Positions 6,564-28,183 of a stretch of DNA of 64,000 bases are shown here, piece by piece. Below the pieces are notes generated by a model, which worked only from the letters and a program-made list of their open reading frames with translations, did not search any database and had not been told where the DNA came from. The stretch covers positions 62,001-126,000 of the IMG/VR virus record IMGVR_UViG_3300036853_000446; one strand, given 5' to 3'. The number at the start of each line of letters is the position of its first letter. Position 1 is the first letter of the stretch. A program made the translations under genes and the position numbers.

Positions 6564-7871
6564 TTACCCGACGTTGTCTACTACAATGTTCTCTGCGTAG
6601 ATGGGACCCAAGACCGTTCCCGTAATCCCGCCCCCACTGAGGTCGGGCACAGTGATGGAATTGAGATTGAGTGCAATCCCAGAAATGGAACTACGGGAGG
6701 GCCCGGCGCCAAACGTAAACCCATAGCCGGAATACGTCGTGGCCGCCGCAGCGACGAATATGAGGACGCGGCATCCCGTGCCAGTACCCGCGGTGATGAC
6801 TTCCCCGATCCCGACAGCGGCGGCGCCTGACACACCGGTCTTAGCGTTGATGTCACCCGTCTGCTGAAAGATAATGCCCAGCTTATCCGCGGCGCTCGTG
6901 GTGAAGCCAGTCGTCGCATTACCGACGTTGTTGAACGTGAACCCGCTGGTGTTGACCGTAGCAAGGGCTCCAGTGACGACAAACGCAATCAAGGTCCGTG
7001 ATTCGCAGCTCCCCGTATAGTTGACGGTGATAGTCCCGGAATCGCCCGGAGCGACGGCCAGAGTGAAGATTCCCGTCGAGCACCCTGCCGTCGTTGTCGT
7101 GTTCGAGCTGGCCCGAAGGGTCATGCCCGACGCTCCGAACATGACCGTCGTCAACACCGCGTTGCCGATCGGCGAGGGCACCGATTCGGCGCCGCCACAA
7201 ACGACGAGTACGGCGCTGTCCACGGTGGAAGGCACCGTGTATGCCAACGTGAGAGAGCTTCCTGCGACAATGGAACTCGCCGTCTGAACGTTGAAGACCG
7301 TAGCGCCCCCCGTGTTGGGGGCACCTTCATTCATCACCCACCGACCCACCAGGCCAGAGACGATTCTGTCGCGCCCCCGCGACGCATAAATGGTCTGGAC
7401 CTCATCGGCGGTCAGAGCCCGATTGTAAACGCGGACATCTTCCATCAGGCCGTTGAAGACCCGTAACGGCCATGGGCCGTTACCGATTACCAAGCTTTGG
7501 GTGTTCACGCTGCCTGTGGCGCCCGTGGCCGTGGTGGCCTCTTGAACCCCGTCGATATACATCCGCAGCAAGGCCGCGGTCGTGTCGTAGACACCACAGA
7601 CGTGGTGGAGCGTGTTACTCGCGAGGGTCGTCGTACTCTGCACGACGGGGAAGGATCCATTGAAGTTTCCGAACTCCGCACCGTCCCAGACTTGGATTGA
7701 CAGTTCCCAACCGGTCCCGCCAGCCTGCGGCTCTTTGGAAAGAATTTCGTGCCTCACGCCCGTGGCAGAGCGCTTGACCCAAGCCATCGCTGTAAAGGCC
7801 ACACCCGTTCCGAAGTCTAGGTTGTCCCCGCAGTCGATGTAGTTCGTCAAACCGTCAAAAGCGAAGGCCAT
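6564..7871 (-). CDS. LamG/concanavalin A-like lectin domain tail protein (435 aa)
   Basis: FDG..NYI, FT..AWVK, HHVCGVYD, RMYIDG, LVIG, FNGLMEDVRVYNRALTADEV are LamG-3 hallmarks. Confidence 0.85.
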   Translation of the reverse strand: MAFAFDGLTNYIDCGDNLDFGTGVAFTAMAWVKRSATGVRHEILSKEPQAGGTGWELSIQVWDGAEFGNFNGSFPVVQSTTTLASNTLHHVCGVYDTTAALLRMYIDGVQEATTATGATGSVNTQSLVIGNGPWPLRVFNGLMEDVRVYNRALTADEVQTIYASRGRDRIVSGLVGRWVMNEGAPNTGGATVFNVQTASSIVAGSSLTLAYTVPSTVDSAVLVVCGGAESVPSPIGNAVLTTVMFGASGMTLRASSNTTTTAGCSTGIFTLAVAPGDSGTITVNYTGSCESRTLIAFVVTGALATVNTSGFTFNNVGNATTGFTTSAADKLGIIFQQTGDINAKTGVSGAAAVGIGEVITAGTGTGCRVLIFVAAAATTYSGYGFTFGAGPSRSSISGIALNLNSITVPDLSGGGITGTVLGPIYAENIVVDNVG

Positions 7872-7872
7872 T

Positions 7873-10800: not shown

Positions 10801-13101
10801 GGTAACCGTATGAGTGTGGTCCGAGCGCGCGAGCGAGGTAGCCGTCCCTTCTGCAGCGACGTTGCCGACGGCAACGGCTCCCGCCGCCGGGGTCGCTGTA
10901 GAGACGTCGTGTTTATGGTCGGCCTTGGCCGCATCCGTCGCGACCCCGACCGCGGCCGCTGCCTTCGTCACATCTGCGGGCGGAGCGGCGGTCAAGGTCA
11001 GAGCAACCGGAGTTGCAAACGCGAGACCCGTCACCGCTAAAGTGATCGGATCGTCCGTCGTCAGCTGGAAAAGCTTGTTTCCGTTGGCGGTGCCCTCAGA
11101 AACGGGGACGACCGTGCCGCCGCGAACCTCGCTGCTCGCGTCGAAATCCACAGCCCGAACCCAGGCACCAGCGGCGACTACATAGATGCCGTTTTGAGAC
11201 CCCGTCGACTGGTCCTTGACGAGCACACGCTGCGTCGCGATGACCGAGACGCCGTCGATCGTCTGAGGTGCAGAAAGGGTGATGTTGGCCGTCGTGGCCG
11301 CTCGGACCGGCTGCTTGATCGCCGTCGTGATGCTGTCAAAGTTGACTTTGTCAGCGGCGGACATGAAACCCGCAATCGCAGTCGTCGCCACCGCGTGCAG
11401 GGTGCCACTGGTTTGGGCACCGTGATCGTGAACGTGGTCACTCCGGGTGAATGTCGTTGCTGCTCCACCCGAGTTGGCTATACCAATAGCAACCGGAGTG
11501 CCCCCCGCCACCGAGTGGGTGTGGTCGCTCCGAGCTAGAGATACAGCCGTACCCTCGGTTGCGGCACCTCCGATGGCTACAGCGCCGGTCGCGGCCGTCG
11601 TGATGTCGTGCTTATGATCAGACCGGGCAAGCGACGTAGCCGTACCCTCGGCGGCGGCCGCCTTCGTAACGTTGACGGGGATGGCCGTTGAAATGTCATG
11701 CTTGTGATCTGCCCGGGCTGCGTCTGTAGCGACGCCCACGGCAGCGGCGGCCTTCGTGACGTCGACGGGTGCCGCGGCCGTCAAAGTTAGGGCGACGGGA
11801 GTTGCAAAGACGAGAGCTGTCGAGCCCAACGCGATCGGGTCGTCCGAGATGAGCTGGAAAATCCGATTCGCGTTCGTCGTACCTTCCGAGACGGCGACGA
11901 TGAGCCCACCTCGAACTTCGGCGCTATTGTCGAAATCTACAGAGCGAGTCCAGGCGCCCGTTGCAGCAACGTAAATGCCGTTGTTGGCTCCCGTGATCTG
12001 GTCCTTGACCAGGACCCGGTCAGCTGCGACGACGGACACGCCGTCGATCGTCTGAGTACCCGACAACGTGATGTTTGCGGTCGTGGCCGCCCGCACTGGC
12101 TGCTTGATCGCCGTGACCGTACTGTCGAAATCCGCCTTGTCAGCGGCAGACATGAACCCAGCCACGGAAGTAGTGACCACCGCGTGCAGGGTGCCGCTCG
12201 TCTGGGCACCATGATCGTGGACATGGTCACTTCGGGTGAACGTCGTTGCCGAGCCGGCGGCATTCGCCGTTCCAATCGCCACCGGGATCCCCCCAGCAAT
12301 CGAGTGGGTGTGGTCCGAGCGCGCGAGCGACGTCGCGCTACCTTCCGTAGCCGAATCCCCGATGGCGGCAGCTCCAACCGTAGCCGTTGTGATATCGTGC
12401 TGGTGGTCTGCCCGGGCCGCGTCGGTGGCCACCCCGACGGCAGCCGCTGCCTTCGTGACGTTGACCGGAGCCGACAGAGTGAGGGCTGCAGATCCCTCGG
12501 AGACCCCGTCGAGCTTGGTCTTGTCCGGAGCCGATAGGAAGCCTGCAACAGAGGTCGTGGCCACCGCATGAAGAGTGCCACTCGTCTGGGCTCCGTGGTC
12601 GTGGACGTGGTCGCTTCGGACAAAGGTCGCCGCAGAGCCTGCGGCATTCGCGGTGCCAACTGTGACCGGGTTGCCCCCTGCCACCGAGTGGGTATGATCC
12701 GAACGGGCTAAAGAAGTGGCCGATCCTTCGGCAGCAACGCCTCCAATGGACACGGCACCCGGGGTTGCCGTCGAGACATCGTGCTTGTGGTCTGCGCGTG
12801 CCGCATCCGTTGCAACACCGATGGCAGCTGCAGTCGTCGTAACATCGACGGGGGGCGTAGTAGTGAGCCCCGTGCTCCCCCCGACTCCGTCCCAAGTGGG
12901 CGTAATCGAGGTGAGGACCCAGAGCGTACTGTCGTCCTCTTGAAGTGCCAGTCGATCTAGGTCATCTACCGTCAGATTTCCAAGAATGGCGGGCACACCA
13001 ACGGTCGGCGTGAAGGCAACTCGACTCGCCGCGTTGGCAAACCTCCACGCAATAGGAGTGTGAGGTCCCTTAGCGATTGTAACTTTTCGATGCTCGCCCA
13101 T
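7873..13101 (-). CDS. Long tail fibre with nine His-x-His repeat modules (1742 aa)
   Basis: Nine ~125-155-aa units with ARADHKHD / ARSDHxH / RSDHVHDH, three copies of the QTIDGV..DRVLVKDQ..NGIY..GAW.R..D fibre domain, distinct C-terminal domain. Confidence 0.85.
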   Translation of the reverse strand: MGEHRKVTIAKGPHTPIAWRFANAASRVAFTPTVGVPAILGNLTVDDLDRLALQEDDSTLWVLTSITPTWDGVGGSTGLTTTPPVDVTTTAAAIGVATDAARADHKHDVSTATPGAVSIGGVAAEGSATSLARSDHTHSVAGGNPVTVGTANAAGSAATFVRSDHVHDHGAQTSGTLHAVATTSVAGFLSAPDKTKLDGVSEGSAALTLSAPVNVTKAAAAVGVATDAARADHQHDITTATVGAAAIGDSATEGSATSLARSDHTHSIAGGIPVAIGTANAAGSATTFTRSDHVHDHGAQTSGTLHAVVTTSVAGFMSAADKADFDSTVTAIKQPVRAATTANITLSGTQTIDGVSVVAADRVLVKDQITGANNGIYVAATGAWTRSVDFDNSAEVRGGLIVAVSEGTTNANRIFQLISDDPIALGSTALVFATPVALTLTAAAPVDVTKAAAAVGVATDAARADHKHDISTAIPVNVTKAAAAEGTATSLARSDHKHDITTAATGAVAIGGAATEGTAVSLARSDHTHSVAGGTPVAIGIANSGGAATTFTRSDHVHDHGAQTSGTLHAVATTAIAGFMSAADKVNFDSITTAIKQPVRAATTANITLSAPQTIDGVSVIATQRVLVKDQSTGSQNGIYVVAAGAWVRAVDFDASSEVRGGTVVPVSEGTANGNKLFQLTTDDPITLAVTGLAFATPVALTLTAAPPADVTKAAAAVGVATDAAKADHKHDVSTATPAAGAVAVGNVAAEGTATSLARSDHTHTVTAAVPVAIGTANSTGSATTLVRSDHVHDHGAQTSGTLHAAATTSVAGFLSASDKTKLDGVSAGAAPLTSTAPADVTKAAAAVGVATDAARADHKHDVTTATPVTGAVAVGNSEAEGTATTLARSDHQHTVTAATPVAIGTANAAGTATTFVRSDHVHDHGAQTSGTLHSAVTGLTNGFMLAADKTKLDGVAVSAAALASTAPVDITKSTAVVGTAADAARADHKHDVTTAVPVAGAVAAGNTAAEGTATTLARSDHQHTIAVVAPSTIGTVNSAGSAATFVRSDHVHDHGAQTVATLHAVVTGAANGFMLAADKTKLDGVSAAAAALASSAPVDITKAAATVGIGTTAARVDHKHDIATAAAGVAAIGDLATEGSAVTMARSDHTHSIAAGIPVAVGIANSAGVATTFARSDHVHDHGTQSSGTLHAAATTSVSGFLSATDKTRLDGMATGAAALASTAPSDVTKAAAAVGVGATAARADHKHDVSTAVVGAITAAASAAEGTAITLARSDHTHSVAVAVPVAIGTANAAGVATTFIRSDHVHDHGAQTSGTLHAVVTSSANGFMLAADKVNLDSTVTAIKQPVRLASTANLTLSGTQTIDGVSAVAGDRVLAKDQSTGSQNGIYAVAAGAWSRAVDFDADAEVRAAVIIRISEGAANGDHVAILTTNDPITVGTTALTFSVTQVVGLTSNAPADVTKAAAVAGVATDAARSDHKHDVTTATPAAGAVAVGNSAVEGTATTLARSDHQHTVAAAAPVAIGTANAAGAATTFVRSDHVHDHGAQTSGTLHAAVTTSVNGFMVATDKTKLDSIPLQRRWYQAADLTSPVNANWTVNAFAPLSADLVNIGLSVRRFDDTTQEGVSWSETIPPGATNVTLYFKSRAQTAPGGTVAVVPALYRRTIPDNAAVGAWSSVTNLTAISIPTNTNFQYDSQTITLSSLSLSAGTFVQYELTRVGTNVSDTLAGDWVLLELGVEYT
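8368..12864 (-). repeat. Intragenic tandem repeat array of the fibre gene
   Basis: About 390-nt period; exact 50-nt duplicate at 10541..10590 and 10931..10980. Confidence 0.9.
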
Positions 13102-13114
13102 CTCACAAGAGCAA

Positions 13115-13130
13115 GCTCAAAAGAGGACTA
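13115..13130 (-). promoter_or_regulatory. CTTTT-core motif copy
   Basis: TAGTCCTCTTTTGAGC, identical 16-mer to 20680..20695, 14 nt upstream of the fibre ATG. Confidence 0.55.
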
Positions 13131-13158
13131 AGCTTTCTGCGACGGATGGCCCCCCAGC

Positions 13159-13611
13159 TCAGCCGTACAATAACAATTCGTCTTCATCGGCGAGCCACCC
13201 ATCCACGCCCACCGTTGGGCTCACAGCTTCAAACGTGGTCCCGTCGGCCGAAAGAAGCACCTGCCCCGCCAACGTTGGCGTGAACGTGGCAATCCCCGTC
13301 CAAACCGCCGCCTCAGCCGTATCGTCGACACAAATGAACACGGCTCCCGTAGATGCAATAACCCACCACATGCCAGTCGAACAGCCGGCGCTGGTGTCGT
13401 CGGTTGCTGTCGGGCTCCGTGTCGGGTGCACGAAGACAGGGCGGCCATTGAAGACCCCGAGGGCATCCAGGAACTTGAATCGATCTGTGACATAGCGTAC
13501 ACCCCCCGCGCCGGTCGGGTCGCCACCAGCAAGGCCGCCAGGGCCCTGGTCGTAGAGAATGATGCCCTCATCCTCACGCTCGCCTGGGAAGCGGTCCGCA
13601 GTCCTCGGCAC
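13159..13611 (-). CDS. Tail fibre-associated protein (150 aa)
   Basis: PTATDD.SAG.STG.WW....G.VFICVD.T..AAVW motif typical of phage fibre segments. Confidence 0.55.
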   Translation of the reverse strand: MPRTADRFPGEREDEGIILYDQGPGGLAGGDPTGAGGVRYVTDRFKFLDALGVFNGRPVFVHPTRSPTATDDTSAGCSTGMWWVIASTGAVFICVDDTAEAAVWTGIATFTPTLAGQVLLSADGTTFEAVSPTVGVDGWLADEDELLLYG

Positions 13612-17086: not shown

Positions 17087-17932
17087 TCATTTGACTGGGA
17101 TATCCCAGCTCTTTGTAGCCGCCAGAACGGCCGCCATGTGTTTGCACACGAAATTCTGACGCTCGGGGTCTCGAATGTCGGGCGGCGACGCGGTGCCCAT
17201 CAGAGGTCCGAGTTGATAGTCCTCGGGCCCGGTTGCATGATACTCTGGCCCCTGCCACTGCCACGCCGGACACGAGCACGAGAGTTCGAGGTCCATCTTC
17301 GCAAACTTTGTCGTATTGGCGCGTGGACGGACCGCGCGGATCTTGACCGCGTAGACGTGCTTGCCCTTCACGCTGAAGATCCAGCGCAGATTTTTACGAT
17401 CGGCGCGCTTCAAGGTGACCTTGACCTTGCGAGAACGACTGACAAACTTTGGATTCAGCCCCTCGAGAATGTGCTCGGCCGTCGCCGCGACCCGGGCCGC
17501 CGTGCAGTCCTGATATCGAAGCCGCAGGATCGGGGCGCGCTCGAGCAAGTGAAGCGCCGCAACGAACGCCGGATCTGCGCCCGCGTTGTGGGTGTTCGGC
17601 TTGTCGTCCCGATACGGGTATTTCGTCTTGGACGAGTCGTCGTCCTTGTCGCCCAGGCCCATGAACGACGGGGACGTGCCTCCCTGCTCGACCCAGCGTG
17701 TCTCCGCAGGCAGGTCTTCTTCCTTTGCCCAGCTGTCAGGACCGTCGATCCGATGGGGAGACCCCGGCGCCGTGTCGGGCTCGCGGATGTCTTCCTCCGG
17801 CTTTGAGAACGTCTTGTAACCCACCTCGTCGCCGTCAAGAGAGATACCCTTCCCCGCAGGGCTGCCGCTCGGCAGCTGAGCCGTCGCCCTGGGGTTGAGA
17901 TCCGCTGGACGAGAGACGAGGGGCTCTCTCAC
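17087..17932 (-). CDS. SWIM-type zinc finger protein (281 aa)
   Basis: CSCPAWQWQG...CKH in the C-terminal half, preceded by ARVAA. Confidence 0.65.
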   Translation of the reverse strand: MREPLVSRPADLNPRATAQLPSGSPAGKGISLDGDEVGYKTFSKPEEDIREPDTAPGSPHRIDGPDSWAKEEDLPAETRWVEQGGTSPSFMGLGDKDDDSSKTKYPYRDDKPNTHNAGADPAFVAALHLLERAPILRLRYQDCTAARVAATAEHILEGLNPKFVSRSRKVKVTLKRADRKNLRWIFSVKGKHVYAVKIRAVRPRANTTKFAKMDLELSCSCPAWQWQGPEYHATGPEDYQLGPLMGTASPPDIRDPERQNFVCKHMAAVLAATKSWDIPVK

Positions 17933-20685
17933 GCAGCTTTCCAGGCGTCAACAGACGCGCTCGGGGTTCGGCGACGACCGGCGACCTTGACCCCGTGCTG
18001 GCTCAAATGGTCTTCGAATGCTTCGAGCGCTTCATGGTCCGCGTGCTTGCGCTTCAGCTCGTCGTAGGCCTCCTCAGCGTCGTCGGCGTCAACGTCACGG
18101 CCCGAGTTCCACATCGAGCCCACGGAATAGAGGTTCGTCCCCTGCCCGCCGTGCCACGACATGATCTCTTCGATGATGCTGCCGTCATCGGGAGCTGGGA
18201 TCTTTCTGGCGACCTTCCAGGTGCCCGATTCCTCAGGGGCTGCCGCCGTCTTGCTTTCTCCCCAAGACTTCACCTTCGGAGGAAGACTGCTTTCTTCAAT
18301 CTTCTTCCACTGGCGCGTGTGAGACTTCGGAACGGAGTTCTTCGTGGCCTTCATTCTGTTCTCGGGGTCGACGAGGATGCCCGCCCAACCGCCATTTTTC
18401 TGCTCCGTCTGCGCCAAAAAATACATATCGCCTCGGGAGTCAAACTTCTGAACGTACCACTCGCCAGCACTCATAGAGTCCACAGCCCAGCGCGCTCCCG
18501 CCGCCTTGAAGTTGTCCTTGTGCTCCTCCGTGTTGGCCTTCCATTCCTTCGCGTCCTCGGGAGACATCTTCTTCGTGGGATCGGCAGACTTGCCTTCTTC
18601 GAACCGTGAGAGCTTCTCGTCGTCGCTCGCGACCTCGAGCCTCGCCGCAAAGTTCATCATCGGGCGCGCCCCGCCGTACGGCATGATCGCCTTGACCACC
18701 CGGACCAGGAACCCCGTTCCAGGGATACCGAAGATGTTGGTTACGTTATAGACGTCACCGAGAACCTTCATCAGGTTGAAAAACATCTTCTTGTAGTTGC
18801 CCTGGCTCCCGGTCATCTTCGTCATTCGCGCGTGCTGCATGAGTTCCTCGAGGGCACCATCCAGCTCTTCGAGGTCACGCGGCTCCGCGTCGATATTCGC
18901 CTTCTTTTCGACCGCGCCGTCATTACCTGACTCGTTGTCGCCGTTGCCATCGTCAGCATCGCCCGCGTTCTTGACCCGCAGGGTGAGCGTCGCCTTATTG
19001 AGAAGAGCCGAGACCGACGGAAGATTTAAGTTCCAAGCCGTGCTCCCCAACTCGGTGAGTACTTCCTTGAACGTGCGGGTGATGCCACCAGGGCTTGCGG
19101 AACCGTTCAGCATCCGTTGCAGACGCTTGAGGCCAAAAATAGCCTCCTCCACGAATACCGCGGCATCAACGGGAGAAAGTGTGGGGAGAGCGGTAGGCAA
19201 CATCAGCTCCGTCAGGTCGCCTTTTGCGTCTTTCTTAAACTTGTCCCCGTGCTCCTCGGTGTTGGCCTTCCACTCTTTGGCGTCTGCCTCGCTCATGTTC
19301 TTCGTGGGATCGGCGGATTTGCCTTCCTCGTAGCGCGAGAGCTTCTCATCGTCGCCCGAAGCGTTCTTATTGGCGGCTTCAGCCCCCGCGTCGTCGTCTT
19401 TCCATTTCGCCTTTACGACGGCAGCGGTCCGCTCGAGGAGGTTTATGATTGCCTCGTCCTGATTCATCTTCTCGGAGGCGTCGCGCAAACTCCTGAGCGC
19501 CGCGTAAACGACGCGCTTCTGACTGCCCGTCCCCCGGACGAGCTTCTTCAGTGACTCAATGGCTTCCTGGATGCTCTCCACTGCTTCATCAGAGGGCTTC
19601 GCCGCTAGCCTGACGGTCCAGTCCCCTGCCTGCTTCAGGTTGGATTCGTCGTAGTCATTCATGTCGGCTGCGGACCAGAGGCTCACCACTTTATGGACGG
19701 CCTTGATGAGTACCTCGGACAAGTCTTGCTGACCCATCAAGGCCAAGCCCTGGGCCAAACACCCTAAGACGACCTGCGTGTGGCGCCTTGGATTGCCCTG
19801 GCCGTCCATGATCTTCTTGATCATCATGCGACTGGCTTCAAACTCGTTCCGAATCTCCTTCGGAAGCTTGCCAGCAGCCGTCACGTCGACATGTTCTGCG
19901 TACGTCTTCCTGAGAACCTGAGCCAAACGCACCCGGCTCGGCATCTCGCCCGCGGGCGGATTCTCGAGGGCGTGCGCCATCGCCTCGAGCTGGGAGGCCA
20001 CCTTGTCCCCCGCGTCGGTGGCCACCTTCGGGGCCCCTCTCTCGAGCGACGCGATCAACATCGAAAGACCGTCGGTATCGAGACGACCGTCGGCGCGGGC
20101 GCGCTTGGCCAAGCCCTTGAGTTGCTCGACGACTTTTCCTGGATTCAGCATGCCTTGACCTTCCGACGCTGCGGACCTTGTGGTTGATTCGTTGGTTCTT
20201 GTCGGCGCCGAGCCACTCGACATGGGTGCGCCCCGTCGGTGGACTTGGCGTATCCGAACGTCTTTCAGGACGCGCTCGAGTTCCTCGGTCTTCTCGGGAC
20301 GGAGGTCCTGCTTGATTTCTTCGTAATCGATGCGATTGGCGGCGAGCGCGACCGCCTGGAGAGCCTTGTGCAGCTTGAACGACGTCTCGGGAATCCCTTG
20401 AATGAGATCCCCGGCAACCTCGAAGAGGTGATCCTTGTGCTGCGACTTTTGGACGAGCTTCGCTGCCTTGTCGACGTACCGGAGGAGCTGATCGCAGCGT
20501 ACTCGCGCATCCGTCAGCTCTTCTTGCAAATACGTGATTATATTCGCCTGTTTGGCGCGTGCATCGGCGATTGTCGCTGCCGTCACAGCGGTTCCAACCC
20601 TACCGAGACGTTCAGGGGGCCCCTCATTGCGTGCTGCCCCCTCCCGTTGATCCTTCAGTGCGCCCATCGCCATGAGCGCGCTCAA
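17929..20685 (-). CDS. Modular repeat protein, probable internal head polyprotein (up to 918 aa)
   Basis: Two near-identical 40-aa modules and four diverged helical modules separated by K-x-A linkers; start may be ATG 20673. Confidence 0.7.
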   Translation of the reverse strand: MSALMAMGALKDQREGAARNEGPPERLGRVGTAVTAATIADARAKQANIITYLQEELTDARVRCDQLLRYVDKAAKLVQKSQHKDHLFEVAGDLIQGIPETSFKLHKALQAVALAANRIDYEEIKQDLRPEKTEELERVLKDVRIRQVHRRGAPMSSGSAPTRTNESTTRSAASEGQGMLNPGKVVEQLKGLAKRARADGRLDTDGLSMLIASLERGAPKVATDAGDKVASQLEAMAHALENPPAGEMPSRVRLAQVLRKTYAEHVDVTAAGKLPKEIRNEFEASRMMIKKIMDGQGNPRRHTQVVLGCLAQGLALMGQQDLSEVLIKAVHKVVSLWSAADMNDYDESNLKQAGDWTVRLAAKPSDEAVESIQEAIESLKKLVRGTGSQKRVVYAALRSLRDASEKMNQDEAIINLLERTAAVVKAKWKDDDAGAEAANKNASGDDEKLSRYEEGKSADPTKNMSEADAKEWKANTEEHGDKFKKDAKGDLTELMLPTALPTLSPVDAAVFVEEAIFGLKRLQRMLNGSASPGGITRTFKEVLTELGSTAWNLNLPSVSALLNKATLTLRVKNAGDADDGNGDNESGNDGAVEKKANIDAEPRDLEELDGALEELMQHARMTKMTGSQGNYKKMFFNLMKVLGDVYNVTNIFGIPGTGFLVRVVKAIMPYGGARPMMNFAARLEVASDDEKLSRFEEGKSADPTKKMSPEDAKEWKANTEEHKDNFKAAGARWAVDSMSAGEWYVQKFDSRGDMYFLAQTEQKNGGWAGILVDPENRMKATKNSVPKSHTRQWKKIEESSLPPKVKSWGESKTAAAPEESGTWKVARKIPAPDDGSIIEEIMSWHGGQGTNLYSVGSMWNSGRDVDADDAEEAYDELKRKHADHEALEAFEDHLSQHGVKVAGRRRTPSASVDAWKAA

Positions 20686-20695
20686 AAGAGGACTA
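20680..20695 (-). promoter_or_regulatory. CTTTT-core motif copy
   Basis: TAGTCCTCTTTTGAGC, identical to 13115..13130; the TAG is the upstream gene's stop. Confidence 0.55.
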
Positions 20696-21820
20696 GGGCG
20701 CTGTCGCCTGGAAAGCTTCGGGAAACTCCGACACGAGGAGCATCCGCATCTCGGCGTCGGTCTCCGCCGCCGCCACCGCCCGGATCACGTCGGGACGGTC
20801 CTCAAAGTCGGCCTGGAGCCGCGCGAGCTTCTTACGAAGGGGGAGATCGAAATTGTAAAGGTCCGGGAAGTCCCGACAGATGGCTCGAGCGATAACTCGC
20901 CGCGGGTCGATATCCTCAAATGAGGTCACGGCCGGGGCCGTCTGCGGAGACGCGGCCCTTTTTGACTCGAGCGTCCCAGGCGCCTTCTTGGGCCCATTCG
21001 TTGTCGTGAAGCGCATGCCCTCATACTCCATGACGTGCATTTCGGCCGGAGCGCCGTCGAGGCCGCTCAAATCGACGGTACCGATGCCCCCACCGACCGT
21101 CGTCGAGACGTGCATGCCCATCGTATCGACGTCCTTGGGCGCCGGGATCATCGCTACGACATGACCCTGAGTCTCCGGGCCTTCAATCGCCGTCGGGGCG
21201 TCCGGAAGGTGGGCTGCGCGGCGCGAATCGATGTCAGCAAGATAGGCGTCACGCTGTTCGGGCGCCATGCGCTGCAACAATTCCTCCCGAGTCATGCCTC
21301 TACCCGGCTCGATCTGGACGCTGTTGGCCGCGGCAATGACCTGCTGCGAGTTGGAGCCATCCAACGTGGTGCGCACGCCCCCGCGTGTGTTAGCCAGGGT
21401 TTGCAACGTCCGCACCGGGACGCCGTCCTGAGACTCGACCTCGAGGTACTGCCGCTTCTGATTTGATTCGCGAACGCTCTCGGCGTGGTCGCGATAGTTC
21501 CCCACGATCTGCTCTTCAGCCTGAGCTGTCGCGATCAAAGACGCAGCGGCTCGAGGTGCGCTTGGGTTGCCCGTGTCCGCCGGACGCACGTGGATATTCG
21601 CCGATTGAGGCCGAGCGAGCGGCGCTGACGGATCATACGACGCCTCGGGCACGGCCCATCCCGTCTTGATGGCACCTTTGAAGGTGGGCAGAGGCTGCGG
21701 GGGACGGCCGCCCAACACGACGTTGTACCCGTCGAACTCGATGAGCATACCGCGTTGAACAGCAACCCCCGCCATTCCAAAATCGCGCGTCGCCCGGTAT
21801 TTATCCATCTGAGTCTGCAT
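20693..21820 (-). CDS. Hypothetical protein (about 375 aa)
   Basis: ATG 21820 (MQTQMDKY) has AGGAG SD at 7 nt; low-complexity middle, helical C-terminal domain. Confidence 0.65.
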   Translation of the reverse strand: MQTQMDKYRATRDFGMAGVAVQRGMLIEFDGYNVVLGGRPPQPLPTFKGAIKTGWAVPEASYDPSAPLARPQSANIHVRPADTGNPSAPRAAASLIATAQAEEQIVGNYRDHAESVRESNQKRQYLEVESQDGVPVRTLQTLANTRGGVRTTLDGSNSQQVIAAANSVQIEPGRGMTREELLQRMAPEQRDAYLADIDSRRAAHLPDAPTAIEGPETQGHVVAMIPAPKDVDTMGMHVSTTVGGGIGTVDLSGLDGAPAEMHVMEYEGMRFTTTNGPKKAPGTLESKRAASPQTAPAVTSFEDIDPRRVIARAICRDFPDLYNFDLPLRKKLARLQADFEDRPDVIRAVAAAETDAEMRMLLVSEFPEAFQATAP

Positions 21821-21838
21821 CGTTCGTCTCCTATTAGA

Positions 21839-21854
21839 GAGCCAAAAGTGGCCC
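21839..21854 (-). promoter_or_regulatory. CTTTT-core motif, partial
   Basis: GGGCCACTTTTGGCTC shares CCACTTTT with the 37091 copy. Confidence 0.3.
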
Positions 21855-21906
21855 CCAAGGAGACGAAGCAACAAATGGAATATTACCCAGCGAAGCGCCT
21901 TTCGCC

Positions 21907-22873: not shown

Positions 22874-23752
22874 TCAGAAGCGCGTCACGATGATGCGCAC
22901 CAACCCTCTAGGGTTGTGGGCCCCCAGGCCGAGGTTCTCAAATACAGAAAATCCAATCGTCCGTGCTTTCGGATCATCCGCTGAAAGTACGGTGAGTTCC
23001 GTGCGCACGGGCACTCGACCGAACATCTCTGGCTCGGTCGCCAGATAAATGAATCCGGCGGGAACCAAACGACTCGTGATGATCTGCGCGCCCCACAGAG
23101 TTGCCTGGAGACCCGTCTTCAGCAACGTGGCTTGCGACTCGATATCCAAGATGTCGCGACCAAACTTGCGGATGTCCGCGTAGTCGACCGCATTCATGAA
23201 AATGCGCGCGACCCTCAAGTCGTGGCGTTCGATCTCCGCAAATCCGTCCGCGAGGACGCTCGGCGAGACCGGGGCCACCACGGCCAAGTCTGGGTTCGTA
23301 CCGCCCGCGAGGGTATCGAAGCCGCTGACGGCGATCGAATCGAGTACGGCAAAGACGCGCTCGTCTTCCGCCGCCTGAATCTGGGCCTTCGCGAGGTCCT
23401 GAGCGCGCTCGATGAGGTCGAAGCGACGCTCTTTGATCTGCGTGAGCGGGATCTCGGGGTTCGAGGCGATCTCGAACAGCGGGAAGATCACCCGCCGAGG
23501 CTTTTGAATCGAGACGATGTTCTGGCCTTCCTCGCCGACCACGAACGCTGTGACTTCCGGGTCTTTGTCGTAGATCGGCAAAGCACCGTCAGGCAGCTGC
23601 TCGACGAGGAAGGTCTTTCGACCCACCGCCGTGTAGTCGCGACGAAGGCGTAGGGGTTGAACCATCGAGGCGGCCAACTTGGCGCGCCCTGCCGCAGTCT
23701 TGATGTACTCACTGATGAGTTGCTGCTTGGCTTGGTTTGAAACTTGTTGCAT
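22874..23752 (-). CDS. Major capsid protein, HK97-like (292 aa)
   Basis: Position after protease, scaffold and decoration genes; followed by a strong terminator; FEIASNPEIP...DLIERAQ..AKAQIQAAED..F and terminal GFSVFENLG pattern. Confidence 0.8.
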   Translation of the reverse strand: MQQVSNQAKQQLISEYIKTAAGRAKLAASMVQPLRLRRDYTAVGRKTFLVEQLPDGALPIYDKDPEVTAFVVGEEGQNIVSIQKPRRVIFPLFEIASNPEIPLTQIKERRFDLIERAQDLAKAQIQAAEDERVFAVLDSIAVSGFDTLAGGTNPDLAVVAPVSPSVLADGFAEIERHDLRVARIFMNAVDYADIRKFGRDILDIESQATLLKTGLQATLWGAQIITSRLVPAGFIYLATEPEMFGRVPVRTELTVLSADDPKARTIGFSVFENLGLGAHNPRGLVRIIVTRF

Positions 23753-24519: not shown

Positions 24520-26238
24520 TCAGGAGCCGAACACGCCGCTCACGTCTGGAGCCGAAGACCACATCCCCGAGAGGCGGTTGATCTCTTCTGCGCCCGACGA
24601 CGGCATACCCGTCATTGCACCACCGAGTTGGCTCACGCCCGAGGAGGGACGAGTCCCAACCGTTCGAGTCGAAGCCGTTCTCGTGGCGGCGACCGGTCCG
24701 CGTCCGGACTGGAGCGCCTTTGCCTCGAGAGCCCGCTGCACCTCACCGTCGGAGGCGAAGATCTGCTGGAGAGCCTGATCGTCACCCTCGAACCCGAGAT
24801 CCATCTCCGGGGCGTCCATCTGAATGGATTCTTCAGTGAAATCGCCCTGGTCTTGCAGCATCTGGTCAACGAGATCATCATCCGCCATCAGCTGTTGCTG
24901 CTGGCCGAGCTGCTGCTGTTGACCGAGCCCGATCTGCAGACCCTGCTGCTGACCAATCTGCTGTTGATCCTGTTGCTGGCCAACCTGCTGTTGCTGCTGG
25001 CCAACCTGCTGCTGGTCCTGCTGCTCCTGGGACATCTGCTGCATGGCGTTCTGCACGAGCTGCTGAACCTGCGACTGCACCTGATCCTGAGCCATCGGGG
25101 CGAGCTGCTCGCTTGCGGCCTTGGCCAACCCGGGCAGGGCGACCTTGAAGGCTGCCGGACGGGACTTCACGGGAAGCGCGAGGAGTGCTGCAGCGGCCTG
25201 CTTGATGAGAGCGTAGGCCTCCTTACCCACCTGCTTCTCCTCCTGGCCCTCCTTCTTCTCATCGTCCTCGTCTTCGGCGAACTTGGACCGAGCTTTCAAC
25301 TTGGATTTGGACTTGGCCTGTTTTGATTGGCCCTCGTCGTCATCATCGTCGTCGTCCTGCTGCGCCTTGCGGGCACGAGCCTCTTTGGACTGACCGTCGT
25401 CGTCATCATCGTCGTCGTCCTGCTGCGCCTTCAGACGACGGCGGGCTTCCTTGGACTGACCCTCGTCGTCCTCGTCATCATCATCCTGAGCCTTGCGGGC
25501 CCGGGCTTCCTTGGACTGACCCTCGTCGTCCTCGTCATCATCGTCCTGCTGCGCCTTCAGACGACGGCGGGCTTCCTTGGACTGACTCTTGTCATCATCC
25601 TTGTCCTTGTCTTTCGCCTCGTCCTTCTTCTTCTGAATGTTCTTCAAGAACTCCGGCGGCAGATCTTTGGCCTGCTTGGCCTGACCCTCCTCGTCGTCCT
25701 CATCATCATCCTCGGACGCTTCCTTCTGCTGCCCGTCGTCATCATCGTCATCGTCGTCGTCCTGTTGCTCTTGGGCGAGACGCGCGAGGGTGGTGCGTAG
25801 GTTCGACAGCGGAAGATCCATGAGATTCAGCGCCTGGTCCTCGACGACCTGCTCCAAGGCTGTCCGTGGCAGCATCCGTCGAGCGACTTTGGTGGCGATA
25901 TCGGCCTTGGCGTGAACCTCGGCAATATCCGGGCGGCGCCCCGCTTGGCGGGACGGCGACACGCCGGGGGCCTTGTCGGGGTTGCCGAAGGTGTCCTTGC
26001 GGTACTCCGGCATCCCGATCTGATCCCGTTTGGTATTTCCATCCGGGCCCAGATCTGCCTTCCAACCTTTACCGGGGGGACTCTGGTCCTCGGCGAACTC
26101 GCTCGGGCCCCCGATCACGTAAGCATCTGCTGCCGGTTGTTGCTGAAGATGTTCCTGATTCATCGCTCGAGGATCTTCAGCGACTCTCCTCAACTGGCTT
26201 GCGATTCTCTGACGGCTCCAAGTAGTGCGTTCGCGCAT
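24520..26238 (-). CDS. Capsid scaffolding protein (about 572 aa)
   Basis: Between protease and decoration/capsid genes; acidic tandem repeats and Gln tract; ATG 26238 favoured over 26277. Confidence 0.7.
   Translation of the reverse strand: MRERTTWSRQRIASQLRRVAEDPRAMNQEHLQQQPAADAYVIGGPSEFAEDQSPPGKGWKADLGPDGNTKRDQIGMPEYRKDTFGNPDKAPGVSPSRQAGRRPDIAEVHAKADIATKVARRMLPRTALEQVVEDQALNLMDLPLSNLRTTLARLAQEQQDDDDDDDDDGQQKEASEDDDEDDEEGQAKQAKDLPPEFLKNIQKKKDEAKDKDKDDDKSQSKEARRRLKAQQDDDDEDDEGQSKEARARKAQDDDDEDDEGQSKEARRRLKAQQDDDDDDDDGQSKEARARKAQQDDDDDDDEGQSKQAKSKSKLKARSKFAEDEDDEKKEGQEEKQVGKEAYALIKQAAAALLALPVKSRPAAFKVALPGLAKAASEQLAPMAQDQVQSQVQQLVQNAMQQMSQEQQDQQQVGQQQQQVGQQQDQQQIGQQQGLQIGLGQQQQLGQQQQLMADDDLVDQMLQDQGDFTEESIQMDAPEMDLGFEGDDQALQQIFASDGEVQRALEAKALQSGRGPVAATRTASTRTVGTRPSSGVSQLGGAMTGMPSSGAEEINRLSGMWSSAPDVSGVFGS
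25330..25760 (-). repeat. Acidic tandem repeats in the scaffold gene
   Basis: (QQ)DDDDDDDGQSKEAR(RRLKA or ARKA) units, four SKEAR copies. Confidence 0.85.
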
Positions 26239-26273
26239 GGGAAAAATGCCCTTTCTCTGCACCGGTAGCGGGC

Positions 26274-26289
26274 GCATAAAAGGATTTCA
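26274..26289 (-). promoter_or_regulatory. CTTTT-core motif copy
   Basis: TGAAATCCTTTTATGC upstream of the scaffold; TGA is the protease stop; TCCTTTTATG shared with the 3171 copy. Confidence 0.4.
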
Positions 26290-27822
26290 GATCCCCAAAT
26301 CAAAAAGTCGTCCTTTGGTGATGAGGGCGAGCTTCTCGCTTTGCGTGGGCTCACGCCCGAGGACCCGACCACACGCGGTCAGGTAGGTCGCCACATCTAC
26401 ATAGGAGGCTGCGCCGCCCACCGCGAGCACGGTCCGATAGATCCGAGCCTCCCCAGCGACCGTCGGAGTCTTGTGAAGTAGATCCAAAACCCTAGATATT
26501 GCGAGAACATCGCGTCCCGAGAACCCTCGAGAGGCCTCTACGGCGCGCCACCCGCCGGCTCTGTGCAGGAGCACGCCCTCGGTGACTCGCGCCGCGTTCT
26601 GACGGTCCCCGATGAGGCGCCCCACGGCATGGGCGAGCCGCTGACGCAGGGGGCTCGCGCTCGCCGGGATCAAATTATTGTTGGAATGATCCTCTTCGAC
26701 CTCGTTCCCCGGACTCTTTCCCCCCATGTCCTGACGGATCTTCTGAACCGCGCGGTCGGTGAGCGCCTTGGCGAGATCTTTGACGACCGAGTCGAGTGGA
26801 TCCTTCTCCACTTTAGGACTCGGCTTCTTCCCAGCCCCCTCACCACTCTGATCGGTGTCATCACCGCCACCATCACCGTCATTACCAGCGCCGCCCGGGA
26901 ACTGCTCCTTCTCGTCACCGAAGTCGAGTGCGGTTCGAGCTGCCTTTGCGCGGGCGTTGCGATCAACACGACGGGGCGGCGCACTCAAGGCCACCTGCAG
27001 GCGATCGGTATGGAGATGATTGTAGAGTGAAGCCTCTTCGGGCGAGAGGATGTTTCGGACGACGGCGCCTTTGAAGGCGGGATTGCCAACCCAGGAGGCC
27101 TCTATAAATTTGTTAGAGTTCGGCTCGCTAACATTTCCACACAGCTCTGCAATCTTGCGTTGCGTCCCAAGGATATCGAGAAACGTGTTTCCCTTCTCAT
27201 ATTTTATGTGGGCACAAAGTTCGGTTTCGTCAGCGGCGACGTTGCCGCACTTAGTGCAGGCCGTGAAACTTACATTACAGCCCATCGAGAGCGTCTGGAG
27301 TTGCTTCGAGTTGATCGCCGCGATGAGCGGTCGATGCTTCCGAGCGGTTGCGACGAGAATGTCGATATAGACGCTGTCGCCGATATCGCGGGCGCAAGCG
27401 TCCACGATCTTGCCCTTGCTCATCTCGGGCAGCTGCAAGTGTTCGACGTAGTTTTCCCCGCCTACGAACGTGCGGAACGACGCGAGAAGTAGCTTCCTTT
27501 CCCATGCGTCGTGGTTCGAATTTATATAAGCGCTCGTCTTCGCGGTGATGTAGTAGTCCTGGAACCGTCGATCAACTGTGAACCCGTCCTCGAGGTGACG
27601 CCCGAGAGCCTTCGGACCATTCTCGGTGTCGACCGACGCCACGATAGTGCAATGGGTCAGGAGGTAGTCTTTGGGGGTAAACTCACCGAGGGTAACTTTG
27701 GAGGCACCTCGCCTAGCAAACGCCGACCCTAAAGCTTGCGCGCTGTCGCGCACTCGATCCCAAACCGGCATGTTGATGTCCGGCTTGATGATGTTGGCGT
27801 AGGCGTATTTGGCAAAAGCCAC
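26287..27822 (-). CDS. Prohead (capsid maturation) protease with C-terminal extension (about 511 aa)
   Basis: YVEH, LSMGC, FIEASWVGNPAF fit HK97/assemblin-type proteases; CxxC...C insertion; GTG 27822 has AAAGAAAGGT SD. Confidence 0.65.
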   Translation of the reverse strand: MAFAKYAYANIIKPDINMPVWDRVRDSAQALGSAFARRGASKVTLGEFTPKDYLLTHCTIVASVDTENGPKALGRHLEDGFTVDRRFQDYYITAKTSAYINSNHDAWERKLLLASFRTFVGGENYVEHLQLPEMSKGKIVDACARDIGDSVYIDILVATARKHRPLIAAINSKQLQTLSMGCNVSFTACTKCGNVAADETELCAHIKYEKGNTFLDILGTQRKIAELCGNVSEPNSNKFIEASWVGNPAFKGAVVRNILSPEEASLYNHLHTDRLQVALSAPPRRVDRNARAKAARTALDFGDEKEQFPGGAGNDGDGGGDDTDQSGEGAGKKPSPKVEKDPLDSVVKDLAKALTDRAVQKIRQDMGGKSPGNEVEEDHSNNNLIPASASPLRQRLAHAVGRLIGDRQNAARVTEGVLLHRAGGWRAVEASRGFSGRDVLAISRVLDLLHKTPTVAGEARIYRTVLAVGGAASYVDVATYLTACGRVLGREPTQSEKLALITKGRLFDLGI

Positions 27823-27826
27823 GACG

Positions 27827-28183
27827 TCAGACCTTTCTTTGGACAGGATATTTCGGCGCCTTGCCAGTCCGCACAAACTCGTCGATGGCTTTGAACACCT
27901 TGGTCACGTAGGGCGCCGCGTGCAGCCGACGATTGATCGCTGCCTTCAGCTTCTCGAGGTCAGCGGGATCCGAGCTGTCTTTCGACGCGCCCATGTCGCC
28001 CTCGATATCTTCCAGTGCCTTCAGCAAGTGCCCAAGACCATAGATGTTGTGTTGGCGATTCTTTTTTCTGGCCGCAGCCTCCTGCTGCTGATCCCACTGG
28101 ATCAGTAGACCCTGCAGAATCAAGAGGAAGCCCTTCACCGTTGCAGGTACACCAGCAATCACTCTGCGGTCGTAGTCGTACAT
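27827..28183 (-). CDS. Hypothetical protein (118 aa), possible head-internal protein
   Basis: Abuts the upstream stop; N-terminus MYDYDRRVIAG. Confidence 0.55.
   Translation of the reverse strand: MYDYDRRVIAGVPATVKGFLLILQGLLIQWDQQQEAAARKKNRQHNIYGLGHLLKALEDIEGDMGASKDSSDPADLEKLKAAINRRLHAAPYVTKVFKAIDEFVRTGKAPKYPVQRKV

What the first reader, a model, noticed from the sequence alone, without database searches (positions are those of the whole stretch)
17929..20685. 918-aa protein built like a polyprotein: two module types strung between K-x-A linkers
Seen: a 40-aa module occurs twice almost identically (DDEKLSRYEEGKSADPTKNMSEADAKEWKANTEEHGDKFK at 19234..19353; DDEKLSRFEEGKSADPTKKMSPEDAKEWKANTEEHKDNFK at 18505..18624). 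Four diverged ~60-aa helical modules align by eye (EFEASRMMIKKIMDGQGN.., SIQEAIESLKKLVRGTGS.., FVEEAIFGLKRLQRMLNGSAS.., ALEELMQHARMTKMTGSQGN..). Module edges coincide with KQA, KNA, KDA, KKA, KAA, KTA and KVA; I count about 18 K-x-A tripeptides and the protein ends in WKAA. Inference: a head-packaged precursor cut into many small proteins that may be ejected with the DNA, with modules gained and lost by recombination.
Basis: partly seen in the sequence, partly recalled or inferred. Interest (0 to 1): 0.75.

Follow-up and report, generated by a model that had tools for sequence, protein, structure and literature searches.

The report
Modular head-cluster protein, huge phage
A 407-kb phage encodes, among its head genes, a 918-residue string of small helical modules and two copies of a very conserved 47-residue motif; the floppy linkers carry a Lys-x-Ala signature that is probably the cutting site of the phage's capsid protease, but cutting has not been shown.

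Summary
The ORF (17929-20685, minus strand) has two copies of one motif, which I call MOT (85% identical). It has 18 K-x-A tripeptides.

The window comes from a 407,634-bp phage contig. The gene lies in the head cluster, in a conserved block: p393, this gene, a SWIM-finger protein, p137.

Relatives share a conserved N-terminal domain (Ndom). Behind it, the number and order of modules vary: 0 to 4 MOT copies and 244 to about 1050 residues. In three lineages the modules are separate genes.

MOT also occurs in giant proteins that lack Ndom and are fused or adjacent to a C39-like peptidase.

K-x-A is not chance:
- In the target it is enriched only in linkers (12 sites against 4.1 expected).
- Across the family it is the top gapped dipeptide, and only at this spacing.
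- It is threefold enriched in the acidic scaffold-like protein.
- It forms conserved islands before Ndom, after MOT, before the C-terminal WK[VA] tail, and at the border of the protease domain.

Best reading: a head-internal precursor trimmed or cut at [K/R]-x-A by the prohead protease. Cleavage, packaging and ejection remain inferred. No known family matches.

The parts
17929..20685 (-). Whole ORF, 918 aa. The start is uncertain: TTG at 20685, or ATG at 20673 or 20667. It has no Pfam, PHROG or NCBIfam match.
20545..20685 (-). Variable, disordered N-terminal leader (aa 1-47) ending in K45-Q-A47. 90 of 105 relatives have K-x-A-[G/S] 5-6 residues before the first helix of Ndom.
20251..20544 (-). 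Ndom (aa 48-145). This is the most conserved part of the family, a predicted long helical hairpin. It is the only part kept in minimal relatives of 136-278 aa.
19882..20148 (-). N2 (aa 180-268), a second conserved helical segment. Conserved K-x-A sites at K220 and K228 lie in its internal loop.
19651..19872 (-). Helical module H1 (aa 272-345), homologous to H2 and H3.
19390..19602 (-). Helical module H2 (aa 362-432), a three-helix bundle with pLDDT about 90.
19219..19359 (-). MOT copy 1 (aa 443-489). Invariant residues are E-E-G, D-P-T and W; M, D-x-F-K and others are nearly invariant. It is preceded by K440-N-A and followed by K485-D-A.
18961..19188 (-). Helical module H3 (aa 500-575), followed by a disordered acidic linker that holds K572-N-A and K594-K-A.
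18631..18885 (-). Module H4 (aa 601-685), a different type from H1-H3. Its end carries the conserved PYGGARPxxNFA stretch.
18490..18630 (-). MOT copy 2 (aa 686-732), followed by K727-A-A.
18346..18483 (-). Small beta-strand unit Cb (aa 735-780). In relatives it occurs in other positions.
17971..18222 (-). C-terminal helical domain Cdom (aa 822-905, pLDDT about 92), preceded by T-W-K-V-A. Only some relatives have it.
17932..17979 (-). C-terminal tail (aa 903-918): K900-V-A, then 16 residues ending in W-K-A-A. 56 of 114 class 1 relatives end in a WK[VA]-type tail, usually preceded by K-x-A-S.
20693..21874 (-). p393, the conserved upstream neighbour of the family. Function unknown.
17087..17932 (-). 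281-aa protein with a C-terminal SWIM zinc finger, the conserved downstream neighbour. Its listed start overlaps the target's stop codon.
26287..27876 (-). Prohead protease (PHROG 'head maturation protease'). H146 and S197 are invariant. Conserved K-x-A islands lie at the N-terminus (MAFxKYA) and at the border between the protease domain and the variable linker (K311-A-A-R).
24520..26277 (-). Acidic, Q-rich scaffold-like protein. Each acidic repeat starts with GQSKEA. It has 13 K-x-A against 4.7 expected, and its orthologues have 220 against 70.
22874..23752 (-). Major capsid protein (HK97 fold, 40% identical to phage G gp27, PDB 6WKK).

Best explanation
The gene encodes a member of an uncharacterised family that I call class 1. 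The family is specific to one clade of huge phages, related to uncultured phage LR745208 and, more distantly, to Tunturi_5 and Bacillus phage G.

A conserved N-terminal helical domain (Ndom) acts as the constant part, probably an anchor inside the prohead. It carries a variable train of small passenger modules: helical bundles, the 47-residue MOT mini-domain, and small C-terminal domains. The modules are joined by disordered linkers.

The linkers, the short N-terminal leader and the C-terminal WK tail carry the motif [K/R]-x-A, often followed by S, A or G. The same motif is over-represented in the scaffold-like protein, and it marks the border of the catalytic domain of the prohead protease.

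I infer that [K/R]-x-A is the recognition site of that protease. By analogy with herpesvirus assemblin sites, cutting would fall after the Ala. On this reading, during head maturation the precursor is trimmed and probably cut into modules. These include free MOT peptides of about 45-50 residues, which would stay in the head.

Shown: the anatomy, the variability, the synteny, and the statistics and conservation of the motif.
Inferred: packaging into the head, cleavage, and the fate of the products.
For: Head context:
- Portal, protease and major head protein were identified by PHROGs.
- The block p393 / family member / SWIM protein / p137 is kept in all of the roughly 45 class 1 loci, and most of them also show protease, scaffold-like, decoration and MCP genes upstream.

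Modularity:
- AlphaFold gives confident modules and disordered linkers, with pTM 0.28.
- Architectures differ in almost every relative.
- Minimal relatives have Ndom only.
- Ndom and MOT parts are separate genes in three lineages.

MOT:
- It hits 526 representative clusters at E <= 0.001.
- The two copies in the target have diverged synonymously but are held at protein level.

K-x-A:
- In the target it is enriched in linkers only.
- It ranks first among gapped dipeptides in class 1 tails (464 observed, 307 expected) and in class 2 (654 observed, 346 expected).
- The scaffold-like orthologues have 220 against 70. There is no enrichment in the SWIM protein, p137, p132 or p522.
- Only the i, i+2 spacing and only this orientation are enriched. 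R-x-A and K-x-x-S rise with it.
- Conserved islands: before Ndom in 90 of 105 relatives; after MOT in 117 of 125 instances; and at the protease N-terminus and the end of its catalytic domain.
- Related phages with the same protease family show the same bias in proteins of the head gene cluster: Tunturi_5 gp332 has 16 against 5.6 and gp328 has 19 against 8.8. Phage G gp19 and gp21 show it more weakly.

Precedent:
- Giant-phage head proteins are cut at a three-residue motif, A-X-E with a Ser preference at P1', by the prohead protease. Propeptides are cut at several sites (PMC10052503).
Against: - There is no experimental evidence of cleavage or of presence in virions, and no cultured phage carries the family.
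- The protease could not be assigned to a peptidase family: Pfam S78 does not match, no solved relative was found, and the AlphaFold model of the catalytic part is poor.
- Homologous sequences are not independent, so the family-level z-scores are inflated.
- K-x-A also occurs inside MOT (G-K-P-A) and inside predicted helices, where cutting is unlikely.
- MOT copy 2 of the target has no K-x-A directly upstream.
- The complex prediction of MOT with the MCP and the protease gave no answer.
- The phage G capsid protein was deposited from residue 1, so heavy MCP processing is not a feature of this lineage.
Confidence: 0.5

Rival explanations
1. An uncut, or only end-trimmed, multivalent tether or auxiliary scaffold. 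MOT copies and the WK[VA] tail would be repeated binding motifs for a very conserved partner such as the inner face of the capsid protein. The protein would work as one long flexible chain, and K-x-A would be a structural or binding feature, or be cut only at the leader and the tail.
For: - MOT and the MCP are both unusually conserved in this clade. The MCP is 79-91% identical while neighbours are 31-72%.
- MOT copy number varies from 1 to 5, as expected for avidity.
- Half of class 1 proteins end in the same WK[VA] tail, which looks like a terminal docking peptide.
- The strongest K-x-A islands are at the two ends.
Against: - K-x-A is enriched throughout the internal linkers, and also in the scaffold-like and protease proteins, which binding to one partner does not explain.
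- Modules exist as separate genes in some phages.
- The complex prediction gave no answer either way.
Confidence: 0.3
2. A polyvalent, host-directed effector train. The modules would be anti-defence or takeover factors delivered with the DNA and released by a dedicated peptidase, such as the C39-like cysteine peptidase found with class 2 proteins, rather than by the prohead protease.
For: - MOT is shared with giant class 2 proteins, up to 1773 aa. In 18 loci these are fused to, or directly follow, a C39-like peptidase.
- Some class 2 proteins carry DUF2958 or DUF7007.
- The polyvalent-protein concept includes processing into individual units by an embedded peptidase (PMC5512222).
Against: - The window's genome has no C39-like peptidase and no class 2 protein, although the record is only 86% complete.
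- No module matches any known effector or polyvalent-protein domain.
- K-x-A enrichment in the scaffold-like protein points to the head protease.
Confidence: 0.1
3. An external or neck-associated structural protein, such as a head fibre, collar or whisker, encoded between the capsid gene and the neck and tail genes. The modules would be spacers.
For: - The gene lies between the MCP and genes that lead to a probable tail module.
- The predicted Ndom is a long helical hairpin that could oligomerise.
Against: - It is all-helical with long disordered linkers, and I detected no Ig-like or beta-helix domains, which fibres usually have.
- The tail length varies from 0 to about 800 residues.
- A shared motif with the scaffold-like and protease proteins is not expected for an external fibre.
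Confidence: 0.05

Closest known systems
T4 prohead core proteins (IPI-III, Alt, gp22, gp67, gp68) processed by gp21
   Same: Head-internal proteins are targeted by a short terminal peptide. The prohead protease cuts them at a three-residue motif that is shared with the scaffold and the protease itself, and some products stay in the head and are injected (own knowledge; summarised in PMC10052503). Here a short leader ends in the candidate motif, and the same motif is found in the scaffold-like and protease proteins.
   Different: There is no sequence relationship. The candidate motif is [K/R]-x-A, not (L/I)-x-E. The protein is a train of many modules rather than one domain behind a leader. Nothing has been tested experimentally.
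Ejection and inner-body proteins of phiKZ-like giant phages (SPN3US gp53/gp54, cut by gp245 after A-X-E)
   Same: These are giant-phage head proteins with propeptides cut at several sites with a three-residue motif and a Ser preference at P1'. The protease removes its own C-terminal part (PMC10052503). Compare the K-A-A-R island after the catalytic domain here and the K-x-x-S enrichment.
   Different: It is a different phage lineage, a different protein family and a different motif. In SPN3US one mature domain remains after propeptide removal, whereas here many small modules would be separated.
Herpesvirus assemblin and its scaffold sites
   Same: From my own knowledge, assemblin cuts scaffold proteins and itself at (V/L/I)-x-A, before Ser. 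That means Ala at P1 and Ser at P1', in an enzyme whose fold is shared with phage prohead proteases. The candidate motif here also has Ala at the same position and frequently S, A or G after it.
   Different: The P3 position is basic here, not aliphatic. The fold of this protease could not be established.
Polyvalent proteins of phages and conjugative elements (Iyer et al. 2017, PMC5512222)
   Same: Many domains sit in one polypeptide, architectures vary, the genes lie near virion genes, and processing into units is proposed. Class 2 MOT proteins with a C39-like peptidase fit this pattern.
   Different: None of the defining enzymatic or LPD domains, and no metallopeptidase, is present in the target. 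Its modules are small helical units of unknown activity.
Phage scaffolding proteins with a C-terminal coat-binding peptide, and encapsulin cargo-loading peptides
   Same: A short conserved terminal peptide could dock cargo to an HK97-fold shell (own knowledge). Compare the WK[VA] tail on half of class 1 proteins.
   Different: Binding is untested, and the one prediction attempted gave no answer. A separate acidic scaffold-like protein is encoded next to the protease.

Membership tests
Prohead-protease substrates of the head interior (T4 IP or phiKZ ejection-protein type) | Encoded in the head-gene cluster of a tailed phage that has a prohead protease. | tested here: met
   Portal, protease and major head protein were found by PHROGs. 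The synteny is conserved in about 45 loci.
Prohead-protease substrates of the head interior (T4 IP or phiKZ ejection-protein type) | Carries the same short cleavage motif as the scaffold and the protease, at domain borders. | tested here: met
   [K/R]-x-A is enriched and conserved in class 1 linkers, in the scaffold-like orthologues and at the border of the protease domain. This is a sequence pattern only.
Prohead-protease substrates of the head interior (T4 IP or phiKZ ejection-protein type) | Actually cleaved by the protease and present in mature heads. | not testable with these tools
   No cultured member exists and no proteomics is available.
Prohead-protease substrates of the head interior (T4 IP or phiKZ ejection-protein type) | Sequence or fold homology to known internal or ejection proteins. 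| tested here: not met
   There are no Pfam, PHROG or NCBIfam hits. Foldseek against the PDB found nothing at E <= 0.001. Atlas scores were at most 0.56.
Polyvalent proteins (Iyer et al. 2017) | Several recognisable effector or enzymatic domains (methylase, helicase, ParB, ART, LPD and others) in one polypeptide. | tested here: not met
   The target has no such domain. Only class 2 relatives carry C39, DUF2958 or DUF7007.
Polyvalent proteins (Iyer et al. 2017) | An embedded or adjacent processing peptidase. | tested here: not met
   No C39-like peptidase was found in the window's genome, which is 86% complete. The feature is met for class 2 relatives in other phages.
Viral polyprotein in the strict sense | Products are separate functional proteins released by site-specific cleavage. 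| tested here: inconclusive
   Modules are independent folding units, and in three lineages they are separate genes. Cleavage itself is untested.
HK97-type (S78) or T4-type (S77) prohead protease, for the neighbouring enzyme | A match to the family profile or fold, with a His/Ser catalytic pair. | tested here: inconclusive
   It matches PHROG 18299 'head maturation protease' at E = 1.3e-9. H146 and S197 are invariant, 51 residues apart. But there is no Pfam S78 match, no PDB relative, and the model is poor.

The most novel reading that the evidence does not exclude
This clade of huge phages builds true head-packaged polyproteins. A prohead protease with an assemblin-like Ala-P1 specificity ([K/R]-x-A) would chop a modular precursor into many small proteins. 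It would also release the near-invariant 47-residue MOT mini-domain as free peptides, 1-5 per chain. The same cargo train can ride on either of two vehicles, the Ndom anchor or a C39-peptidase giant protein. The products would travel with the DNA into the host.
Probability: 0.2. Interest if true: 0.8.

Novelty: new variant of a known kind. Interest (0 to 1): 0.6.

Why it matters
Very little is known about what huge phages outside the phiKZ group pack into their heads besides DNA. This family gives three things:
- A concrete, testable candidate for the cleavage specificity of the prohead protease of the phage G / Tunturi_5 / LR745208 lineage.
- A widespread, near-invariant 47-residue motif (526 representative clusters) with no annotation.
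- An example of passenger modules that swap between two different carrier proteins.

If cleavage is confirmed, [K/R]-x-A would allow mature virion proteins to be predicted across hundreds of uncultured huge-phage genomes. MOT would become a candidate packaged or injected peptide.

Tried and rejected
- Family searches: Pfam, PHROGs and NCBIfam on the target and its neighbours gave nothing for the target.
- PF10421 (OAS1_C) hits in some homologues fall on the 32-residue MOT helix. Weak HMG_box and DUF2280 hits fall on the same helix. I judged all of these spurious.
- Fold searches: Foldseek of the whole model against the PDB had no match at E <= 0.001, as expected for a beads-on-a-string model. 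ESM Atlas searches with Ndom, Cdom and MOT scored at most 0.56, so they are leads only.
- MOT as a general targeting signal on many proteins of this genome: rejected, because only this ORF has it.
- Paralogues of the protein in its own genome: none.
- A C39-like peptidase or an S78 protease profile in its own genome: none.
It was repeated with window sequences only, and the result was 'no answer'.
- AlphaFold of the protease with 17 orthologues: the catalytic part has pLDDT under 50, so no fold search was made. Profile search of the PDB found nothing.
- Literature: no paper holds the motif string, and none was found on processing in phage G or Tunturi_5.
- Recent duplication or gene conversion as the reason the two MOT copies are alike: rejected because of the synonymous divergence.
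Full report
WHERE WE ARE. The window is bases 62001-126000 of a single 407,634-bp virus contig, estimated 86% complete. PHROGs identify a portal (31672-33525), a head maturation protease (26287-27876) and a major head protein (22874-23752), all on the minus strand. The capsid protein is 83% identical to that of the 485-kb uncultured phage LR745208. It is 49% identical to Tunturiibacter phage Tunturi_5 (309 kb) and 40% identical to Bacillus phage G gp27, whose structure is solved as 6WKK. The finding is therefore a gene of the head cluster of a huge phage of the wider phage G lineage.

THE OBSERVATION. The ORF at 17929-20685 (minus strand) gives 918 residues from TTG. Gene callers start it at M5, and no clear ribosome-binding site decides between the starts. 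The two 40-residue copies are 85% identical. At DNA level they differ by about 11 synonymous changes, and the similarity ends abruptly at both edges. They are therefore old copies kept by selection on the protein, not a recent duplication. There are 18 K-x-A tripeptides against 9.7 expected. Taken alone this is weak: P is about 0.004 before correction, and L-x-R is more enriched.

ANATOMY. An AlphaFold2 model built with 26 homologues has pTM 0.28, with confident pieces separated by segments below pLDDT 50. In order, the pieces are:
- a disordered leader (aa 1-47);
- a helical hairpin, Ndom (48-145);
- a second helical segment, N2 (180-268);
- three-helix modules at 276-339, 366-427 (pLDDT about 90), 505-571 and 605-670;
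- the two motif helices (460-487 and 703-736);
- three short strands (743-772);
- a helical C-terminal domain (830-900, pLDDT about 92).
An iterative profile search within the homologue set shows that modules H1, H2 and H3 find each other, with domain E-values from 7e-6 to 4e-23. H4 finds only itself. So there is one helical repeat type present three times, plus a different fourth module.

THE FAMILY. A word-indexed search found 68 relatives, all from metagenomes and many on contigs of 100-440 kb. They share the N-terminal 220 residues. Behind that they differ in the number and order of modules.

The repeated motif, which I call MOT, is really about 47 residues long. E-E-G, D-P-T and W are invariant, and M, D-x-F-K and other positions are nearly so. 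A profile of MOT run against 1.84 billion representative proteins finds 526 clusters at E <= 0.001 and 472 at E <= 1e-10, with up to five copies per protein.

Classifying 181 proteins and 76 viral loci gives two classes.
- Class 1 has Ndom plus a variable train of 0-4 MOT copies with or without H1-3-type, H4-type, Cb and Cdom modules. Lengths run from 244 to about 1050 residues. It always sits in the same slot: protease, acidic scaffold-like protein, decoration protein, MCP, a variable insert, p393, class 1, SWIM-finger protein, p137, p132.
- Class 2 lacks Ndom, reaches 1773 residues, and lies elsewhere in the genome. In 18 loci it is fused to, or directly follows, a C39-like cysteine peptidase. 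Some members also hold DUF2958, DUF7007 or an intein.

The two classes overlap in distribution.
- Four contigs carry MOT at two separate loci; in three of them one locus is class 1 and the other class 2.
- In the sub-clade of LR745208, and in five further records, the class 1 slot holds only a minimal Ndom protein of 136-278 residues, and the MOT copies are in class 2.
- All five of those records share the same capsid protein.
- The window's genome has a single MOT protein and no C39-like peptidase.
- In three lineages the slot holds separate genes, an Ndom protein followed by a MOT or MOT-helical protein. One boundary reads stop, one base, ATG.
Module order is thus far from invariant, and module borders coincide with natural gene borders.

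THE K-x-A MOTIF. Several independent lines show that it is real.

(1) In the target, 12 of 18 sites touch low-confidence linkers, where 4.1 are expected (P = 0.0006). Structured parts have 6 against 5.7.

(2) Across the genome's 438 ORFs, K-x-A is at expectation (495 observed, 494 expected). The most enriched ORFs include the scaffold-like protein (13 against 4.7), the target, the portal and p393.

(3) In non-redundant sets of homologues, K-x-A is the first-ranked gapped dipeptide in class 1 tails outside MOT and Ndom (464 against 307). It is also first in class 2 outside MOT (654 against 346), and second in the scaffold-like orthologues (220 against 70). It is not enriched in the SWIM protein, p137, p132 or p522.

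(4) Only the i, i+2 spacing and only this orientation are enriched: 1.5-fold, 1.9-fold and 3.1-fold in the three sets. Other spacings and A-x-K stay between about 0.7 and 1.25. R-x-A and K-x-x-S rise in parallel, which gives [K/R]-x-A-S. The residue after Ala is S, A or G in about half of the sites.

(5) The motif forms conserved islands in otherwise variable sequence.
- K-x-A-[G/S] lies 5-6 residues before Ndom in 90 of 105 class 1 proteins.
- K-x-A directly follows MOT in 117 of 125 instances, whether the sequence is F-K-x-A or F-K-K-x-A.
- [K/R]-x-A lies upstream of MOT in 83 of 125 instances.
- K-x-A-S commonly precedes the C-terminal tail that ends in W-K-[V/A]. Such a tail closes 56 of 114 class 1 proteins.
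- In the protease orthologues there is an N-terminal M-A-F-x-K-Y-A, and a K-A-A-R exactly where the conserved catalytic part meets a hypervariable linker.

(6) Relatives with the same protease family but without class 1 proteins show the same bias in proteins of the head gene cluster. Tunturi_5 gp332 has 16 against 5.6 and gp328 has 19 against 8.8. Phage G gp19 and gp21 show it more weakly.

Homologues are not independent, so the z-scores overstate significance. The specificity of the spacing, and the contrast between protein families in the same loci, do not depend on that.

INTERPRETATION. The most economical reading is that [K/R]-x-A is the recognition site of the prohead protease. It is a short motif shared by the scaffold-like protein, the protease itself and a head-cluster protein, and it is concentrated in disordered linkers and at the two ends.

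The behaviour has a precedent in giant phages. In SPN3US the protease gp245 cuts nine head proteins after A-X-E with a Ser preference at P1'. It cuts long propeptides at several sites and removes its own C-terminal part (PMC10052503). From my own knowledge, T4 gp21 uses (L/I)-x-E, and herpesvirus assemblin uses (V/L/I)-x-A before Ser. The latter has the same Ala/Ser pair as seen here.

If the conserved linker sites of the target were all used, the products would be:
- a 47-residue leader;
- an Ndom piece of about 175 residues;
- helical modules of about 90-210 residues;
- a 45-residue MOT peptide;
- H4 together with MOT2;
- the Cb and Cdom units;
- a 16-residue C-terminal tail.
This map is a prediction, not a result.

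The protease has invariant H146 and S197 in an L-S-M-G context. It could not be placed in a peptidase family.

WHAT REMAINS OPEN.
- Nothing shows that the protein is in the capsid, that it is cut, or that anything is ejected.
- An alternative with real weight is that the chain stays whole, or is trimmed only at its ends, and acts as a multivalent tether. MOT and the capsid protein are both exceptionally conserved: the MCP is 79-91% identical, where the protease is 36-65% and p393 is 31-72%. The WK[VA] tail looks like a docking peptide.
- A prediction of MOT together with the MCP and the protease gave no answer.
- The link of class 2 proteins to a C39-like peptidase fits the polyvalent-protein idea of embedded processing enzymes (PMC5512222). 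That enzyme is absent from this genome.
- No module resembles any known domain.

VERDICT. Cleavage into many products, and ejection, remain inferences. The family and MOT are undescribed. The principle of head proteins processed at a short motif is known, so this is a new variant of a known kind.

Noticed in passing
window 22874-23752 (-) and MCP genes in loci L001-L082: The major capsid protein is 79-91% identical across this clade. In the same loci its neighbours are only 31-72% identical: protease 36-65%, decoration protein about 43-71%, p393 31-72%. This is an unusually strong constraint on the shell protein.
   Followed up: partly
window 24520-26277 (-): The 585-aa scaffold-like protein has tandem acidic repeats (GQSKEA, a basic stretch, then a run of D/E) followed by long Q-rich repeats. 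Each acidic repeat starts with K-E-A.
   Followed up: partly
L076:152-4684, L077, L060, L070; L004:9106-9993 and 13 other loci: Giant MOT-bearing proteins without Ndom are fused to, or preceded by, a C39-like cysteine peptidase. One (L076) also contains an intein with a LAGLIDADG domain. L011 and L033 carry DUF2958.
   Followed up: partly
L032:8987-10999, L053:8535-10360, L066:8151-10393: In three lineages the class 1 slot is split into two or three genes. In L032 the second product starts with M-R-D-P-W-K-V followed at once by MOT.
   Followed up: yes
N-termini of class 1 homologues (e.g. P0014, P0016, P0020, P0033, P0048): Many leaders carry a conserved D-G-C-[LIM]-x-R motif with an invariant Cys about 10 residues before the K-x-A site. 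The window's protein lacks it.
   Followed up: no
window 26287-27876 (-), aa 207-246: The protease has four invariant cysteines (C207, C210, C221, C246) between the putative catalytic Ser and the end of the domain, which suggests a zinc-ribbon insertion. Its C-terminal 120 residues form a confident helical domain (pLDDT about 90).
   Followed up: no
window 17087-17932 (-): The conserved downstream neighbour has a C-terminal SWIM zinc finger and a disordered N-terminal half. Its listed GTG start overlaps the target's stop codon. In LR745208 the homologue is 571 aa.
   Followed up: no
window 7873-13101 (-): A 1742-aa ORF has three stretches that match PHROGs annotated as tail fibre, head decoration or virion structural protein (E down to 3e-85).
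   Followed up: no
window 39753-41702 (-): A 649-aa ORF without any PHROG match is the second most K-x-A-enriched ORF of the genome (10 against 3.6 expected). It could be another protease substrate.
   Followed up: no
L083 (Tunturi_5) 11593-13179 and 6761-9244: Cultured phage Tunturi_5 lacks Ndom and MOT. Its scaffold-slot protein gp332 and its annotated 'DNA ejection protein' gp328 are both K-x-A-rich, which makes it a practical system for testing the motif.
   Followed up: partly
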